Virus record (IMG/VR): IMGVR_UViG_3300029319_006019
Span: 1 to 6,516 of that record
DNA: 6,516 bases
Reading direction: 5' to 3' (one strand)
Shown: positions 3-6,318 of the stretch, one piece after another
Position numbering within the stretch: position 1 is the stretch's first letter
Layout of the letters: every line of letters begins with the position of its first letter
Translations under genes and position numbers: made by a program
Notes under the pieces: generated by a model
What the model was told of the DNA's origin: nothing
The model's database searches: none
Seen by the model: only the letters and a program-made list of their open reading frames with translations

Positions 3-119
3 CCCGGTCGCTCCGCATTCGCTGCCAACTGGGTGGCCTACACGCGGGTGGTCGAAGCATGGAAGGTCATTGGTGGCACCGTGACCATACGCAAGCTGGC
101 CGACAAAGGAGGTGAGTGA
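3..119 (+). CDS. 3' end of a hypothetical protein (partial, runs in from the left edge)
   Basis: Frame 3 is open from the edge (...PGRSAFAANWVAYTRVVEAWKVIGGTVTIRKLADKGGE) to TGA 117-119, which overlaps the next ATG (TGATG coupling). Confidence 0.6.
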   Translation, partial: PGRSAFAANWVAYTRVVEAWKVIGGTVTIRKLADKGGE

Positions 120-286
120 TGACCACCCCCCTCAAGCAGCCCAACAAGGGCATCTTCATCGCAAACCCAGCGGGACTCAGGCCGCTGTTCTATGTCCGTT
201 GCAAATGCTGCAAGGCCAGGGTCGGCCCATACCGCAGCCTCAAAAGGGCACAGAACCACCTGAGGGGATGTAGCGGGAACGGTTAG
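119..286 (+). CDS. Small basic zinc-finger-like protein, 55 aa (C-x2-C-x15-H-x3-C)
   Basis: Hand translation: MTTPLKQPNKGIFIANPAGLRPLFYVRCKCCKARVGPYRSLKRAQNHLRGCSGNG*. Very strong SD AAGGAGGTGA at 106-115 and TGATG overlap with the upstream stop. Not in the ORF track, whose shortest entries are about 60 aa. Confidence 0.7.
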   Translation: MTTPLKQPNKGIFIANPAGLRPLFYVRCKCCKARVGPYRSLKRAQNHLRGCSGNG

Positions 287-329
287 GGGATGGGGCCCTG
301 GACCTTCCCGTTCCTCCCAGGGTCGGCGC

Positions 330-390
330 GGGCGGCGTCGAGAGCAAGTCAGGCTCCTGCACCCCTGGCATGCACCCGCCCACTTTTTTT
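330..390 (+). terminator. Possible intrinsic terminator or structured 3' end
   Basis: GGGCGG (330-335) pairs with CCGCCC (376-381), followed by T7 at 384-390. The enclosed 40 nt is long for a canonical terminator but contains a small stem (GAGC 342-345 / GCTC 353-356). Confidence 0.4.
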
Positions 391-407
391 AACCACTGGT
401 ACCCAAC

Positions 408-436
408 TTGCCCGATTCACTAAATCGTGGTATGTA
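408..436 (+). promoter_or_regulatory. Putative sigma70-type promoter P1
   Basis: TTGCCC (408-413), 17-nt spacer, TATGTA (431-436), with extended -10 TG at 428-429. It lies just after the T-tract and upstream of SD GAGGAG (449-454). The -10 lacks the final conserved T. Confidence 0.5.
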
Positions 437-460
437 GGGCACACAACCGAGGAGACTTCA

Positions 461-913
461 ATGATTGCCAAATACGTTGGTGGTCGTGACCACAAACACT
501 ATATCGAGTTCACCGGTATAACCGAACGCCGAGTAGAGTTCAGCTACAGGCTCGGGTGGAGAGCGACCCCAGTTGAGGAGATGAGGCGGGCTCTTGGGCT
601 CTGCGACATCGAGCCTACATTCTACGAGTTGCTGGAGTCTTGTGACATCCCAACCTGGGCCAGGGTTGAGCTACGACAGCCGTTCCCGTGCCGGACTGGA
701 GTGGACTACAAAGCCGTGACCGTAAGCTTTGCCGCCCGACCAAGGCAGGACCGAAAGCCCATATCTGGGGCGCTTCTATGGAAGAGCATACCGCTTACCG
801 TTGGCAGGGTTGGGCAGATGGTTCAACTCGCCTGTGTGCGCTCAATGTTGGAGGTCACACGGCCTGTGTACCACATTTATCCAGAACGCCCAGCGCTTGC
901 TATTGCTGGGTGA
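461..913 (+). CDS. Hypothetical protein, 150 aa (start revised from 290 to ATG 461)
   Basis: SD GAGGAG (449-454) 6 nt before ATG 461. The 290-460 extension would run through the stem-loops, T-tract and promoter. No recognisable motif. Confidence 0.65.
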   Translation: MIAKYVGGRDHKHYIEFTGITERRVEFSYRLGWRATPVEEMRRALGLCDIEPTFYELLESCDIPTWARVELRQPFPCRTGVDYKAVTVSFAARPRQDRKPISGALLWKSIPLTVGRVGQMVQLACVRSMLEVTRPVYHIYPERPALAIAG

Positions 914-937
914 TGAACTCAAGACAAGGAGAAGACA

Positions 938-1447
938 GTGTCATTTGAACTCGAAATATCGGAAGCAGACGGGGGACACGCAGTCTACCTGGCTGCCCGG
1001 CACGATCCTCGCCTACAGGGGAAGCTGAAAACAACCTCTAATGGCAAACTAAGTCACAACGGAAACAAGCTGGATGAGGAGGGTTTGGCCAACATATCCG
1101 TCTATTTGACGGGTAAGTACGGCATTCGCCCCACGAGGTGGGAGCTTTACTCTGGCCTTGTTGCCGCAGCGGCATCATCTCCGAGGGCCCCTCGGAAGAA
1201 AAGAGAGACCCACATTGAGAAGGATTATTTTGATGCTATCGCCAAGTGGCTGGAAGAGAATGCAAACCGAAACGATGGCACCATGATTACGACGGGCCGC
1301 ATAGGAGAGGCCATCGACCCAGAAGGGATGCTGAAATCCAGAAGAGCGGCTGAGATGAAGATTGCCGCCGCGCTGAGGAAGATGGGCTACAAGTCAAAAC
1401 GAATGATGATCAACGGGACTCGCCAGTATCGGTGGTTCCCGTCCTGA
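938..1447 (+). CDS. VapE-related protein lacking the ATPase domain (N-terminal domain plus C-terminal winged-helix-like domain), 169 aa
   Basis: GTG start with SD AAGGAG about 6 nt upstream. Both halves align by eye to the two ends of the 3615-4946 protein (ISVYLTGKYGIR vs ISLWIDATYGIK; RAAEMKIAAALRKMGYKSKR...RQYRW vs RHAEIRVAEILRELGFKKDR...RVYVW). No Walker A or B motif. Confidence 0.8.
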   Translation: MSFELEISEADGGHAVYLAARHDPRLQGKLKTTSNGKLSHNGNKLDEEGLANISVYLTGKYGIRPTRWELYSGLVAAAASSPRAPRKKRETHIEKDYFDAIAKWLEENANRNDGTMITTGRIGEAIDPEGMLKSRRAAEMKIAAALRKMGYKSKRMMINGTRQYRWFPS

Positions 1448-2409: not shown

Positions 2410-2436
2410 TTCAAGTTGGTAGATCAAGTATCTACC
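2406..2436 (+). promoter_or_regulatory. Putative promoter P3 overlapped by two palindromes
   Basis: TTGATT (2406-2411), 17-nt spacer, TATCTA (2429-2434). Palindromes CTTGA-T-TCAAG (2405-2415) and GGTAGAT-caagt-ATCTACC (2418-2436). The predicted start near 2440 coincides with the start of the structured leader. Confidence 0.45.
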
Positions 2437-2561
2437 TACAGCCCGCCAAGGCTGATCCCCTTGGCACTCCTTCGGGAGGACAGGGCTCCTGGTCAGGCCA
2501 CCCAGAGTGCCCCGCGCTTTGGGTGGCCGCATCAGGACCCCGTGGGCTTACGACCAGGAGC
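2437..2561 (+). ncRNA. Structured cis-regulatory leader RNA upstream of the primase (family not recognised)
   Basis: Stems GCCAAGG/CCTTGGC (2445-2451/2459-2465), CTCC-TTCG-GGAG with a cUUCGg tetraloop (2467-2478), a 15-bp stem with G-U pairs (2496-2510/2514-2528), a closing stem AGCCC/GGGCT (2440-2444/2544-2548), and a 10-bp anti-SD/SD pairing (2485-2494/2552-2561). Confidence 0.62.
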
Positions 2562-2565
2562 AGAG

Positions 2566-3606
2566 ATGTGGATACAACAAGCAAAGGAGCTTCCCGTCCT
2601 TCAGGCGGCGAAAGCTCTTGGGCTACAAAAACGCCGTGGACGTTCTCTGGGCCCATGCCCAGCATGCAACTCAGAGACTCGCGGAACCGATGACAACCGA
2701 GGCCCAATTGGAGTAAGCGGCTCCCAGTTGGCTTGGAAGTGTCATCGCTGCGGAATCAAGGGGGATGTCGTCGACCTGGCATCCTTTCGGCTGCATGAGT
2801 TGCCCTTTAGAGAGCTACCGTCTGGCAGACAGCTTGAAGTGCGCACATGGTTCGCAGAGCAAGGCGCATGCCCAAAGCCAGGCGAAACCCGAGTTCCACA
2901 AGGGCTTGAGCACAAGAAAACCCTTCTGCGGGTGGTCGAGGACGGATATCGCCGCCCGCCCCAGCAAGAACTACATGACCTCTGGCGAACTACTTGCTCG
3001 TTTGAAAAGTCGCTAAACGACGACCCAGAGTGGGCAGACCCCATGGCAACGTGGTTGCTGCGCAGAAAGTTTGCCCCGTTGATGCTGGACCAATGCAAGG
3101 CCGCTCGCGTGCTGCCTCCTCCAGGCCGAGTTCAAATGCCAGAGTGGTGGAGAAAGGAGTGGCTTCCCAACTACCGGATAGCTGTTCCCGTCTATGAACC
3201 AGACGGCACATTTGCCAGCATTCACGCAAGAAGCGTAGCTGTACCAGAGATCACACCTAAGACACGATGGCCATATCGATATGAAGCCAGCGAGTTGGTC
3301 ATGGCCAACCCAAACGCTGTCCGCATGATGCGAGGCCAGAAGGTCCCTGGGTTGACCGGCCTGTTAATCTGTGAGGGCCTTACTGATTTCATTCGAGCGT
3401 GCTGTTCAGCACACGCAGAAGAAATGACGATTGCCATCGTCGCTGCGGCCTCGGGTGGCTTTAGAGCAATCCCAAAAATCCAAATTCCCAAACCAATCAA
3501 AATCTACATTGCGACCGACCCTGACGACCGAGGAGACGAATACGCCACAGTGATTGCTGATGGCCTACCCGACCACAAGGTTTACCGAGTCCCGCTGGAG
3601 GCCTAA
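2566..3606 (+). CDS. DnaG-type DNA primase (C4 zinc ribbon + TOPRIM), 346 aa; start revised from TTG 2416 to ATG 2566
   Basis: SD AGGAG (2556-2560) 5 nt before ATG. Zinc motif CPAC-x24-CHRC followed by GIKGDVVDL, TOPRIM motifs LLICEGLTDF and IYIATDPDDRG, and an IHARS segment in the polymerase subdomain. The final D-x-D/N motif is absent before the stop. Confidence 0.9.
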   Translation: MWIQQAKELPVLQAAKALGLQKRRGRSLGPCPACNSETRGTDDNRGPIGVSGSQLAWKCHRCGIKGDVVDLASFRLHELPFRELPSGRQLEVRTWFAEQGACPKPGETRVPQGLEHKKTLLRVVEDGYRRPPQQELHDLWRTTCSFEKSLNDDPEWADPMATWLLRRKFAPLMLDQCKAARVLPPPGRVQMPEWWRKEWLPNYRIAVPVYEPDGTFASIHARSVAVPEITPKTRWPYRYEASELVMANPNAVRMMRGQKVPGLTGLLICEGLTDFIRACCSAHAEEMTIAIVAAASGGFRAIPKIQIPKPIKIYIATDPDDRGDEYATVIADGLPDHKVYRVPLEA

Positions 3607-3614
3607 AACAGAAA

Positions 3615-4946
3615 ATGCCTGACATCGACGGAACGCTGCGCGGAGAGAAGACCTCACTAACGAACTTGCTGAAGATTGCTGAAGCCAAAGGAGACCTGAA
3701 TGAAGATGAAGAAGAGCAACTGGACAGGCATCAACCAGACCCGATTGTGCTGCCTCAACTTGAGCAGTACCGAGACAAGCAGGGGAATCTCACCGGAGTG
3801 CCCAAGCAGTCGCGAAACAACCTGTACAAGATTTTAAGCCTGGACCGTCGATACAAGAACAGCATTTGGGAAAACCTGTTCGACGGCTCTTTGTACCTGA
3901 AAGACGACGAGTACAAGGACACGGACGACACGAAGATATCTTTGTGGATTGATGCGACATACGGCATCAAGTTTGCCGACAACACGGTGGCTGGCATTGC
4001 CAAGCTTATAGGCGAAGAAAACGGGATTAACCCGCTCCAAGAGTGGCTCAAGAGCTTGAAGTGGGATGGAGTCAAGCGCACAGACGATTGGCTTATCCGA
4101 GCGACTGGTTGTGAAGATACTGAGTTGAACCGGATGATGGGCAACAAGTGGCTCATTCAAGCAATAGCCCGCGCAATGAAGCCCGGCGCGAAGGCCGACT
4201 GTGTCTTGATCTTGATTGGACCGCAAGGCGCACGGAAGAGCAGTCTGCTCAGGACCTTGGCTACCGAGCAGTTTTTTTCGGATACGCCTCTCGATATTGG
4301 TTCAGCCAATGCCTACACGCAGATTCAAAGAGCCTGGATCTACGAGGTAGCGGAGCTTGACTCTGTCAGGCGCTCAGCCAACTCAGCAACCAAGGCCTTC
4401 ATCAGTGCCCAGGAAGACACCTACAGGCCAGCGTATGGCCGCAGGGCAGTCACAATCAAGAGACACACCGTCTTTGCCGGAACCACGAACGACAGCCAGT
4501 TTATGAATGACTGGACGGGAAGTCGGCGGTACTGGCCAATCAAGGTGAAGAAGGTTGATCTGGACTGGGTTGCAGAGTTTCGTGACCAGCTTTGGGCTGA
4601 AGCCATCCTTGAGTACAACTCAGGCGCCACATGGTGGCTTGAACAGGAATGGGAGAAGGAGCGCGAAGAAGAAAGCGAGATCTTCCGGCAGGAGGACCCT
4701 TGGAGGGATGTCATCGTTCAGTATGCGCAAAACTACTACGGTGTGATCTCAACGCGAACCATTATGGAGGATGCGCTCAAGCTTGAGAAAAACCACATGA
4801 CTCGACACGCCGAGATTCGTGTGGCCGAGATTCTGCGAGAACTTGGATTTAAGAAGGACCGCAAGCGTGTGGGTGACAGCCGAGTCTATGTTTGGACGAA
4901 AACTAAAGTGATTGAACTAGATAAAACAGGTGATATCGATGAATGA
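3615..4946 (+). CDS. VapE/VirE (virulence-associated protein E) family P-loop ATPase, probable replicative helicase, 443 aa
   Basis: Family-typical WDGVKR, ARAMKPGAKADCVLILIGPQGARKS (Walker A, nt 4218-4241), WIYEVAELD (Walker B), KAFISAQEDTYRPAYGR, FAGTTN, DWTGSRRYWPI, RDQLWAEA and EDPW, then a C-terminal winged-helix-like region. Confidence 0.92.
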   Translation: MPDIDGTLRGEKTSLTNLLKIAEAKGDLNEDEEEQLDRHQPDPIVLPQLEQYRDKQGNLTGVPKQSRNNLYKILSLDRRYKNSIWENLFDGSLYLKDDEYKDTDDTKISLWIDATYGIKFADNTVAGIAKLIGEENGINPLQEWLKSLKWDGVKRTDDWLIRATGCEDTELNRMMGNKWLIQAIARAMKPGAKADCVLILIGPQGARKSSLLRTLATEQFFSDTPLDIGSANAYTQIQRAWIYEVAELDSVRRSANSATKAFISAQEDTYRPAYGRRAVTIKRHTVFAGTTNDSQFMNDWTGSRRYWPIKVKKVDLDWVAEFRDQLWAEAILEYNSGATWWLEQEWEKEREEESEIFRQEDPWRDVIVQYAQNYYGVISTRTIMEDALKLEKNHMTRHAEIRVAEILRELGFKKDRKRVGDSRVYVWTKTKVIELDKTGDIDE

Positions 4947-6318
4947 TGTATGTGTGATTGCAGGAGCGTACTACTTTCCACCGGGAAATAAAGTCGCGGC
5001 CAAACTTTCAAAGTCCTACAGCCTTCCCAACCCTGACTACCGAATGGCTCAAGGCCTACGAAATCGTGGGAAGTGGGTGCAAATGCCGCCCGAACGAGTC
5101 AGCGCATGCCAGGAAATTCCATTCGAGCACCCCTGGGGTGGCGGCATGGCGATTCCTCGTAACGCAAATCTTGATGGGAGCGGCCTCAAGGTAATCGACA
5201 AGCGAACGTACCCAGTAGTCAAAGATCCGTTGACGCCCGTTGGTGGATACAACCTTCGCTCTTACCAGGAAGACGCGCTTGGCGAGTGGATTAAGGCCGG
5301 ACAAGAAGGAGTCATCATTGCTCCATGTGGCGCCGGAAAGACCACCATTGGCATTTTCGCCATCACAGCTTGTGAAACCAAGACGCTAATCCTGGTACAC
5401 ACCAACGACCTTGCTGAGCAGTGGACAAACCGAATCGACACCACTCTTGATGGCTGCACCACCAGCGTCTATGGAGGAGGCAAGAGAGACGACTCAGGCC
5501 GCGTTGTAGTTGCTACATTCCAGACGCTTGACCGAATGTCTTGGGTTGAGCGCTATGAGTGGGCAAAGCAGTTCGGGCTCTGCATTGTTGACGAGTGTCA
5601 CCACGTTCCGGCTGAGATGTTTAGCCGAGTGATGATGACGATTCCAGCAAAACACCGGCTCGGGCTAACGGCTACCCCGCGCAGACAAGATGGCCTTACA
5701 TCGATGCTCTGGTGGCATCTCGGACCAGCCGTCTACGAGATTACCAATGCAGACCTGGCCAAAGACGGGCATGTTTTGCCACCGAAAGTAGAGTGGTTGA
5801 TGACCGACTGGACGGGGCCTAAAGGACAAATGGACTGGCCAAAGCTCGTGAATGAGATGGCTGCAAACATGTACCGAAATGAACGCATCATTAGCCGAAT
5901 AGTTCGAGCGATTGAAGATGGTCGACAAGTCCTTGTTCTTTCTGATCGAGTCAACCATTGCTCGCTTATGGCTCAAGAGCTTCGACTTCGTGGATACACC
6001 GCCGAGCCGCTGGTTGGTCGTATGACAAAGAAGCAGCGCGCCGAAACTTTGGACGCTGCCAGGAATAGGCAAATACAGGTAGTCTGCGCCACGACGCTTG
6101 CAGATGAGGGCCTTGATCTTCCATCGCTTGATACGGTTGTTCTGACAACGCCGACCAAGGCTTTGGCGCGCATTCAGCAGCGAATCGGACGGGTAATGCG
6201 GCCACACCCAGACAAGAAGCCCCCTCTTGTCATTGATGTGGTTGATGACATCGGGTCAATGCGCGGACTCGCCAAGAAGCGAATGAAGCTGTACACTCGT
6301 ATTGGATGTACGTGGTAG
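4939..6318 (+). CDS. Superfamily 2 DExH-box helicase (UvsW/XPB/ResIII-like), about 459 aa
   Basis: Q motif LRSYQ, I APCGAGKT, Ia LVHTNDLAEQW, Ib VATFQTL, II DECHH, III LTATP, V LADEGLDLP, VI QRIGRVMR. ATG 4939 (SD-like AGGTGA 4928-4933, ATGAATGA overlap with the upstream stop) is preferred over GTG 4930. Confidence 0.93.
   Translation: MNDVCVIAGAYYFPPGNKVAAKLSKSYSLPNPDYRMAQGLRNRGKWVQMPPERVSACQEIPFEHPWGGGMAIPRNANLDGSGLKVIDKRTYPVVKDPLTPVGGYNLRSYQEDALGEWIKAGQEGVIIAPCGAGKTTIGIFAITACETKTLILVHTNDLAEQWTNRIDTTLDGCTTSVYGGGKRDDSGRVVVATFQTLDRMSWVERYEWAKQFGLCIVDECHHVPAEMFSRVMMTIPAKHRLGLTATPRRQDGLTSMLWWHLGPAVYEITNADLAKDGHVLPPKVEWLMTDWTGPKGQMDWPKLVNEMAANMYRNERIISRIVRAIEDGRQVLVLSDRVNHCSLMAQELRLRGYTAEPLVGRMTKKQRAETLDAARNRQIQVVCATTLADEGLDLPSLDTVVLTTPTKALARIQQRIGRVMRPHPDKKPPLVIDVVDDIGSMRGLAKKRMKLYTRIGCTW

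What the first reader, a model, noticed from the sequence alone, without database searches (positions are those of the whole stretch)
938..1447. ATPase-less mini-paralog of the neighbouring VapE helicase
Seen in sequence: residues 17-63 align to VapE residues 71-118 (10 identities, one gap: Y..D.R..G.L..IS..YGI). Residues 136-166 align without gaps to VapE 397-427 (12/31 identical: R-AE---A--LR--G-K--R------R-Y-W). The ~215-aa ATPase core between these regions is replaced by a short basic linker (PRAPRKKRETH). I saw little DNA-level similarity and the ORF has its own SD, which points to an old retained gene and not a fresh deletion remnant. Established: in related primase-helicases (e.g. phage P4 alpha) the region before the ATPase supports oligomerisation and the C-terminal winged helix binds origin DNA. 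Inference: the protein could be an origin-binding initiator or helicase loader, or a dominant-negative subunit that poisons helicase rings (copy-number control or exclusion of related phages).
Basis: partly seen in the sequence, partly recalled or inferred. Interest (0 to 1): 0.85.

Follow-up and report, generated by a model that had tools for sequence, protein, structure and literature searches.

The report
ATPase-less paralog of VapE helicase
A small, strongly conserved phage gene encodes the two outer domains of the neighbouring VapE replicative helicase (its N-terminal domain and its C-terminal winged helix) without the motor between them, so it is probably a DNA-binding partner or regulator of that helicase.

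Summary
ORF 938-1447 (169 aa) is a real gene under strong purifying selection (dN/dS 0.07). Its C-terminal half (res 93-167) is clearly homologous to the C-terminal winged-helix domain of the VapE helicase at 3615-4946 (res 359-430). Its N-terminal half (res 14-69) matches VapE res 68-124. That match is not significant pairwise but is clear profile-to-profile, and the independent AlphaFold models agree element by element. The roughly 225-residue P-loop ATPase core is absent, replaced by a 15-residue linker.

The protein belongs to an unannotated family (no Pfam, PHROG or NCBIfam match). A member lies about 2 kb upstream of VapE, on the same strand, in 43 of 48 distinct related marine viral contigs. 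The duplication is old: the winged-helix domains of the two families separate cleanly in a tree, and there is no DNA similarity.

The closest solved structure is the SaPI1 Rep1 self-loading helicase (7PDS). Its C-terminal winged helix binds origin iterons, and its N-terminal domain has no known function.

What the protein does is untested. I favour a basic DNA-binding accessory factor that acts with VapE at initiation. A negative regulator or a transcription factor remain live alternatives. No iterons were found in the window.

The parts
923..928 (+). Shine-Dalgarno sequence AAGGAG of ORF169
   Evidence: Read directly from the sequence. It lies 9 nt upstream of the GTG start. The upstream gene ends at 913.
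938..1447 (+). ORF169, the ATPase-less VapE paralog (169 aa, pI 9.8)
   Evidence: ORF list. Homologs at 92%, 85% and 55% identity. 51 unique family members were found in the fetched loci, with median dN/dS 0.072; window vs L004 gives 0.106. AlphaFold model pLDDT 90.
977..1144 (+). N-terminal domain core (res 14-69), homologous to VapE res 68-124
   Evidence: hhalign P 9e-7, probability 91%. Shuffle control. Secondary-structure elements H12-22, E30-32, E38-40, H47-61 and H67-79 match VapE H67-76, E84-87, E93-95, H102-116 and H122-135 at a constant offset of 55. Family-invariant D23 aligns with VapE-invariant D77. Y61 (invariant among the five closest relatives, Y or W across the wider family) aligns with VapE-invariant Y116.
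1175..1219 (+). Linker (res 80-94, SSPRAPRKKRETHIE) in place of the ATPase core
   Evidence: Lowest confidence in the model (block pLDDT 65). pI 10.9 in the window, but not basic across the whole family.
1214..1438 (+). C-terminal winged-helix domain (res 93-167), homologous to VapE res 359-430
   Evidence: BLASTP E 1e-5. hhalign E 5e-15. The family C-domain HMM hits 86 of 87 VapE ORFs at their C-terminus, median E 5.5e-11. A profile search of 1.84 billion proteins recovers VapE C-termini. The model shows helices followed by a beta hairpin, E151-158 and E161-168.
3615..4946 (+). VapE-type SF3 helicase (443 aa), the full-length paralog
   Evidence: Pfam PF05272 E 1e-76 on res 145-355. PDB 7PDS (SaPI1 Rep1) E 6e-63 by sequence. 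Foldseek TM 0.71 over 446-458 columns, E 4e-28.
3816..3986 (+). VapE N-terminal-domain segment (res 68-124) matched by the ORF169 N domain
4689..4904 (+). VapE C-terminal winged helix (res 359-430) matched by the ORF169 C domain
2566..3606 (+). Zn-finger/Toprim DNA primase of the same module (true start ATG 2566, 346 aa)
   Evidence: phrog_47 DNA primase E 3e-11. Relatives are 346-350 aa.
4930..6318 (+). ResIII/DEAD (XPB-like) SF2 helicase of the same module
   Evidence: Pfam PF04851 E 8e-30 and PF00271 E 2e-19. NCBIfam XPB-like.

Best explanation
ORF169 is an ancient, conserved paralog of the phage's VapE (Rep1-like SF3) replicative helicase. It keeps the helicase's N-terminal domain and its C-terminal winged-helix domain and has lost the whole P-loop motor.

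Shown here:
- Both domains are homologous to the VapE domains and lie in the same order.
- The ATPase is absent.
- The gene is under strong purifying selection.
- It is a near-constant component of the primase-VapE-DEAD helicase replication module in this uncultured marine phage lineage.
- It is much more basic than VapE.

Inferred:
- It binds DNA through the winged helix, the domain that recognises origin iterons in SaPI Rep helicases.
- It uses the shared N-terminal domain to contact the N-terminal tier of the VapE ring, or to oligomerise in the same way.
- It therefore acts as an accessory initiation factor that marks or prepares the origin and recruits or stabilises VapE, and possibly the primase.

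Its universality, its position at the head of the module and its low dN/dS make an essential positive role more likely than a dispensable inhibitory one. The sign of the effect is not established.
For: - Homology of both domains.
- Independent AlphaFold models were built from alignments that share no sequences, and they have matching secondary-structure order at constant offsets.
- The top PDB fold hits for ORF169 are all six chains of 7PDS (probability 0.80-0.97), and VapE/COG5545 proteins are among the top viral hits.
- VapE itself is a full three-tier Rep1-like helicase.
- The positions conserved in the ORF169 winged helix (R136, E139, M140, L146, G150, R155, R162, W166) coincide with positions conserved or identical in the VapE winged helix. 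This suggests the same kind of ligand.
- pI is 9.8 for ORF169 (C domain 10.0) against 5.3 for VapE.
- Synteny: 43 of 48 distinct VapE loci with more than 3 kb upstream carry a family member on the same strand, median 2.1 kb upstream. All ORF169-anchored contexts with enough flank contain VapE.
- dN/dS median is 0.072.
- Longer family members add acidic tails ending in EE and a second winged-helix copy, as expected of an adaptor.
- In SaPI Rep the C-terminal winged helix binds origin iterons (PMC9371898).
Against: - No DNA binding, oligomerisation or VapE contact has been shown.
- No iteron array or obvious origin was found in the 6.5-kb window.
- Only one distant lineage (L014/L015) has a repeat array next to the gene.
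- ORF169 and VapE winged-helix domains from the same phage are barely more alike than those from different phages (27.0% vs 26.6%). Nothing therefore argues that the two proteins read the same DNA sites.
- VapE keeps its own winged helix, and Rep1-like helicases load themselves, so a loader is not obviously needed.
- Five VapE loci with ample upstream sequence lack the gene.
- Foldseek E-values for ORF169 are weak (0.08) because the match is split by the missing domain.
Confidence: 0.45

Rival explanations
1. Negative regulator. ORF169 either competes with VapE for the same DNA sites through its winged helix, or joins VapE rings through the shared N-terminal domain and disables them. This would limit initiation (copy or timing control) or exclude related co-infecting phages.
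For: It has the same two-domain homology and lacks the motor. Motor-less or truncated forms of initiators act as inhibitors in other systems (from general knowledge: short forms of the R6K pi protein, papillomavirus E2 repressor forms). The residues conserved in the winged helix are shared with VapE.
Against: Exclusion or poison factors are usually accessory and variable. This gene is present in about 90% of the lineage at a fixed position and has dN/dS 0.07. The two families have been separate for the whole history of the lineage, and same-phage pairs show no extra similarity. That argues against competition for identical sites.
Confidence: 0.2
2. Transcription factor. ORF169 is a winged-helix regulator of the early or replication operon. 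The N-terminal domain serves only as a dimerisation module, with no physical link to the helicase.
For: It is a small basic winged-helix protein. Foldseek also finds MarR/PadR/ArsR-type regulators at low probability. In L014/L015 a dense TGTCC(C) repeat array lies 200-770 bp upstream of the gene, in a region next to a divergently oriented gene.
Against: The best fold and profile matches are to VapE/Rep1, not to regulators. The N domain is specifically the helicase N-terminal domain. In the window the gene sits 24 nt behind the preceding gene, with no operator-like repeats nearby.
Confidence: 0.15
3. Replisome adaptor that does not bind DNA. The winged helix and N domain are protein-interaction modules linking primase, VapE, the SF2 helicase or host polymerase/SSB. 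The acidic EE tails of the long forms would be the docking peptides.
For: All 10 family members with tails of 20 or more residues have acidic tails ending in EE or ED. The winged-helix motif is unusually conserved across divergent phages (O-O 48%, V-V 56% identity), which is not expected for a domain that reads diverging iterons.
Against: The window's protein has no tail (it ends RWFPS). Its C domain has pI 10 with conserved Arg/Lys residues, which fits nucleic-acid binding.
Confidence: 0.12
4. The similarity to VapE is chance or only a shared generic winged helix, so ORF169 is not a VapE paralog.
For: The pairwise N-terminal alignment is not significant. Other small proteins carry this winged helix alone.
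Against: The N-domain profile match is about 11 sd above column shuffles and improves as sequences are added. Both matches are in the same order as in VapE. Independent models share secondary-structure order at fixed offsets. 7PDS tops the fold search.
Confidence: 0.04

Closest known systems
SaPI1 Rep1 / VapE-family (PF05272) self-loading SF3 helicases (PDB 7PDS; PriRep5 7OLA)
   Same: It has the same N-terminal domain and the same C-terminal winged-helix domain in the same order. The neighbouring VapE superposes on 7PDS over its full length, and ORF169's best PDB fold hits are the 7PDS chains. In Rep the C-terminal winged helix binds origin iterons (PMC9371898).
   Different: ORF169 has no ATPase tier, so it cannot be a helicase. 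It is basic (pI 9.8) where VapE is acidic. The authors state that the function of the Rep N-terminal domain is unknown.
Poxvirus D5/E5, NrS-1 and ASFV primase-helicases (SF3 helicases with a collar domain before the ATPase)
   Same: These are the next fold neighbours of the window's VapE. From general knowledge, the domain before the motor forms a ring tier.
   Different: The relationship is remote (TM 0.3-0.45). No ATPase-less stand-alone derivative of this kind turned up in the two literature searches or two papers consulted here.
Naturally truncated initiator forms (R6K pi short forms, papillomavirus E2 repressor forms, herpesvirus OBPC); from general knowledge, not tested here
   Same: The logic is the same: a protein that keeps the DNA-binding and/or oligomerisation parts of an initiator and lacks the catalytic or activating part, and modulates initiation.
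   Different: Those are made from the same gene by internal starts or splicing and are not homologous to VapE. ORF169 is a separate, anciently duplicated gene with its own ribosome-binding site.
Phage helicase loaders and origin-binding proteins (lambda O/P, SPP1 G38P/G39P); from general knowledge
   Same: They hold a comparable position in a replication module and have a possible comparable role in bringing a helicase to the origin.
   Different: There is no sequence or fold relationship. Those serve DnaB-type helicases, whereas Rep1-like helicases are described as self-loading (PMC9371898).

Membership tests
VapE / Rep1-like SF3 helicase (PF05272) | P-loop ATPase core (Walker A/B; Pfam VapE-like_dom) | tested here: not met
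   ORF169 and the 29 family members scanned have no Pfam hit. No profile alignment to VapE 136-358. The region is replaced by a 15-residue linker.
VapE / Rep1-like SF3 helicase (PF05272) | N-terminal domain preceding the ATPase | tested here: met
   hhalign P 9e-7, probability 91%. Shuffle control. Matching secondary-structure elements at offset 55.
VapE / Rep1-like SF3 helicase (PF05272) | C-terminal winged-helix domain | tested here: met
   BLASTP E 1e-5. hhalign E 5e-15. The HMM hits 86 of 87 VapE C-termini.
Winged-helix DNA-binding proteins | Helical bundle followed by a beta-hairpin wing | tested here: met
   The model has H95-108, H119-126, H128-133, H135-148, E151-158 and E161-168 with pLDDT above 90. 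Foldseek finds wHTH regulators at probability 0.5-0.66.
Winged-helix DNA-binding proteins | Actual DNA binding, specific or not | not testable with these tools
   Only indirect evidence: C-domain pI 10.0 and conserved Arg/Lys residues.
Origin-binding initiator or helicase loader | Cognate repeated binding sites (iterons) at an origin | tested here: inconclusive
   No iteron array in the window. The contig is only 6.5 kb. A TGTCC(C) array lies next to the gene only in L014/L015.
Origin-binding initiator or helicase loader | Physical interaction with the helicase | not testable with these tools
Dominant-negative or poison subunit | Co-assembly with, and inhibition of, the full-length protein | not testable with these tools
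   Needs biochemistry. Conservation and dN/dS argue only indirectly against an accessory inhibitor.

The most novel reading that the evidence does not exclude
ORF169 defines a previously undescribed class of replication factor: a motor-less 'shadow' of an SF3 self-loading helicase. It would use the helicase's own N-terminal tier domain to dock onto or intercalate into the VapE ring, and its own winged helix to hold DNA, so that it controls ring opening or loading at the origin. This would also give the first function for the Rep/VapE N-terminal domain, which the structural papers call unknown.
Probability: 0.25. Interest if true: 0.8.

Novelty: new variant of a known kind. Interest (0 to 1): 0.6.

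Why it matters
VapE/Rep1-like helicases replicate many phages, phage satellites (SaPIs) and SCC elements, and the role of their N-terminal domain is explicitly unknown. Here that domain occurs naturally as a stand-alone, soluble-sized protein fused only to the origin-binding-type winged helix, and it is conserved across a whole phage lineage. That makes it a ready-made tool for asking what the N-terminal domain binds and how these rings are brought to DNA. It also adds a named, testable function class to a protein family that is currently unannotated in marine viromes.

Tried and rejected
- Pairwise Smith-Waterman for the N-terminal match: not significant on its own. Only profiles show it.
- GenBank phages: no DNA match for the window and no tblastn match for ORF169. 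The best cultured VapE relatives are below 40% identity.
- Pfam, PHROGs and NCBIfam for ORF169 and 29 relatives: nothing meaningful.
- PDB sequence searches with family profiles: only chance-level hits.
- IMG/VR scan with the broad alignment A3 failed for lack of a conserved stretch. With A1 it found only the window's own contig and one relative.
- A scan of 185,579 species genomes found no relative, so no host clue.
- Iteron and origin search by repeat finder and k-mer clustering: nothing in the window.
- Promoter and terminator scan: at the level expected by chance.
- Rfam: no match.
- Test for extra similarity between ORF169 and VapE winged-helix domains of the same phage: the difference is negligible (27.0% vs 26.6%). 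The permutation p of 0.0015 is explained by shared phylogeny, so I rejected it as evidence for shared DNA specificity.
- Asking which VapE subfamily ORF169 came from: the scores do not discriminate.
- The first dN/dS script timed out and was rerun.

Full report
**What is in the window**

The window is a complete 6516-bp IMG/VR viral contig, IMGVR_UViG_3300029319_006019. It carries one co-directional gene block on the + strand:
- a 150-aa gene (461-913)
- ORF169 (938-1447)
- a 165-aa gene (1590-2087)
- a gene of about 103 aa (2098-2409)
- a Zn-finger/Toprim primase (2566-3606)
- a VapE-type helicase (3615-4946; PF05272 E 1e-76)
- a ResIII/DEAD XPB-like helicase (4930-6318)

Longer relatives continue with YqaJ exonuclease, RecT and an HNH protein. 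This is the replication and recombination module of an uncultured marine phage lineage. Nothing in GenBank phages matches at the DNA level, and the nearest cultured VapE proteins are below 40% identical.

**Checking the observation**

The C-terminal match is exactly as described. ORF169 136-166 aligns with VapE 397-427 at 12/31 identities without gaps, BLASTP E 1e-5, and 0 of 1000 shuffles reach that score. Profiles extend it to ORF169 93-167 vs VapE 359-430, at E 3e-11 to 5e-15.

Two independent searches agree:
- A profile of ORF169 and four relatives, run against 1.84 billion proteins, recovered family members and the C-termini of bona fide VapE proteins such as P0150, P0152 and P0159.
- An HMM of the family's C domain hits 86 of 87 VapE ORFs in the fetched loci at their C-terminus, median E 5.5e-11.

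As a pairwise alignment it is not above chance: 230 of 1000 shuffles score as well. With profiles it becomes significant, and it strengthens as the family alignment deepens:
- P = 1.6e-4 with 5 sequences.
- P = 9e-7 (N domain vs N domain) and 9e-6 (N domain vs whole VapE) with 26 sequences, probability 83-91%.
- 150 column-shuffled controls scored 13.5 ± 2.4 (max 21.1), against 39.9 observed.

No part of ORF169 aligns to VapE 136-358.

**Structure**

AlphaFold models were built from two alignments that share no sequences. ORF169 reaches pLDDT 90 and VapE reaches 83. The secondary-structure elements correspond one to one at fixed offsets.

| Domain | ORF169 | VapE | Offset |
|---|---|---|---|
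| N | H12-22 | H67-76 | 55 |
| N | E30-32 | E84-87 | 55 |
| N | E38-40 | E93-95 | 55 |
| N | H47-61 | H102-116 | 55 |
| N | H67-79 | H122-135 | 55 |
| C | H135-148 | H397-409 | 261 |
| C | E151-158 | E412-419 | 261 |
| C | E161-168 | E422-429 | 261 |

ORF169 residues 80-94 form a low-confidence linker where VapE has about 225 residues, including the whole ATPase.

- The VapE model superposes on SaPI1 Rep1 (7PDS) over its full length: TM 0.71, E 4e-28. By sequence the match is E 6e-63.
- For ORF169 the top PDB fold hits are all six 7PDS chains, at probability 0.80-0.97. The E-value is only 0.08 because the match is split by the missing domain.
- VapE/COG5545 proteins are among its top hits in the viral structure library.

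**A real, old, conserved gene**

The family has no Pfam, PHROG or NCBIfam model. I recovered 51 unique members from the fetched loci. Over 157 pairs the median dN/dS is 0.072 (range 0.018-0.134), and window vs L004 gives 0.106.

Among 48 distinct VapE-anchored IMG/VR loci with more than 3 kb of upstream sequence, 43 carry a family member. It is always on the same strand as VapE, at a median of 2.1 kb upstream. Every locus found by starting from ORF169 relatives that has enough flank contains VapE.

The five loci with ample upstream sequence but no family member are among the more distant VapE relatives. Two of them have a longer, 695-aa VapE ORF.

The winged-helix domains of the two families average 27% identity to each other, against 48% within the ORF169 family and 56% within VapE. 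In a tree they form one clean split, with support 0.995 and branch length 1.26. There is no collinear DNA similarity between the two genes. The duplication therefore predates the diversification of this phage group and is not a recent deletion remnant.

**What it probably does**

In the closest solved relatives, the SaPI Rep helicases, the C-terminal winged helix recognises origin iterons. The ring loads itself without a loader, and the N-terminal tier has no assigned function (PMC9371898; bioRxiv 10.64898/2026.10.17.759575).

ORF169 keeps exactly these two outer tiers. Three observations bear on its role:
- Its conserved winged-helix positions (R136, E139, M140, L146, G150, R155, R162, W166) coincide with positions conserved or identical in VapE.
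- It is basic (pI 9.8, C domain 10.0) where VapE is acidic (pI 5.3).
- Longer family members append acidic tails that end in EE (one in ED), and some add a second winged-helix copy. That looks like an adaptor.

My best reading, at about 45%, is a DNA-binding accessory initiation factor that works with VapE through the shared N-terminal domain. I favour a positive role because the gene is near-universal, fixed in position and strongly constrained.

The alternatives are:
- a negative regulator or poison subunit (about 20%)
- a plain transcription factor (about 15%)
- a protein-only adaptor (about 12%)

**Evidence against the favoured reading**

- No iterons or origin were found in the window.
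- Winged-helix domains from the same phage are no more alike than those from different phages.
- VapE keeps its own winged helix and may not need help.

**Novelty**

Motor-less or truncated forms of initiators are a known idea in other systems. A separately encoded, anciently duplicated, lineage-wide ATPase-less paralog of a VapE/Rep1-type helicase did not appear in the literature I could search or in any family library. I rate it a new variant of a known kind. Its value is mainly as a natural handle on the unexplained N-terminal domain of these helicases.

Noticed in passing
window 2483-2561 (gap 2410-2565 upstream of the primase start at 2566); also L004 2715-2819, L001 9238-9342, L018 2855-2959: A conserved, very stable hairpin (predicted -42 to -55 kcal/mol) with compensatory changes between relatives, for example CCACCC/GGGTGG becoming CCTCCC/GGGAGG. 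An outer stem's 3' arm, GACCAGGAGC, contains the primase Shine-Dalgarno sequence. Alternative pairings of CTCCTGGTC are possible. It may control primase translation or be a DNA hairpin. There is no Rfam match.
   Followed up: partly
L014 3940-4520 (and L015 4100-4680): A dense array of TGTCC(C)/GGGACA motifs in both orientations, starting about 770 bp and ending about 190 bp upstream of the ORF169-family gene. CTGTCC occurs 11 times in 500 bp out of 17 in the locus (Poisson p about 4e-16). It is a candidate iteron or operator array. It was seen only in this distant lineage.
   Followed up: partly
family members L091 3722-5083, L079 1019-2341, L010 1083-2498 (P0141, P0142, P0145); L014 4709-5530, L011 8735-9481 and others: Long forms of the family carry acidic C-terminal tails. 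The tails end in EE in nine of the ten members with tails of 20 or more residues, and in ED in L014. The forms of about 450 aa also contain a second copy of the winged-helix motif and an extra C-terminal domain. The window's protein is the minimal form.
   Followed up: partly
L088 696-1781 and L090 2760-3848: A protein of about 361 aa matches only the N domain of the family (E about 1e-22), has no winged helix and has no Pfam hit. The N domain is therefore a separable module.
   Followed up: partly
proteins P0147, P0151, P0155, P0156, P0157: Other small proteins (146-246 aa) carry the VapE-type winged helix alone, and P0147 carries two copies. This winged helix is a mobile module beyond VapE and ORF169.
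   Followed up: partly
window 290-913, 2023-2409, 2416-3606: Mechanical ORF calls over-extend three genes. Comparison with relatives places the real starts at 461 (150 aa), about 2098 (about 103 aa) and 2566 (346 aa).
   Followed up: yes
window 116-286 (+): A 56-aa Cys-rich ORF (CKCC...C), matched in size and position by a 55-aa gene called in L004/L005 (sequence similarity not checked). It is followed by a 174-nt gap (287-460) holding a T-run and AGGGCA repeats (146-152, 244-250, 435-441). L004 has 5 of its 8 AGGGCA copies in the equivalent 500 bp.
   Followed up: no
BFVD entries A0A2I7RHU8 (152 aa) and A0A516LY14 (120 aa): Small viral proteins with fold similarity to ORF169 over 127-135 columns (probability 0.94-1.0). 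They may be independent ATPase-less relatives in other phages. Their sequences were not retrievable here.
   Followed up: no
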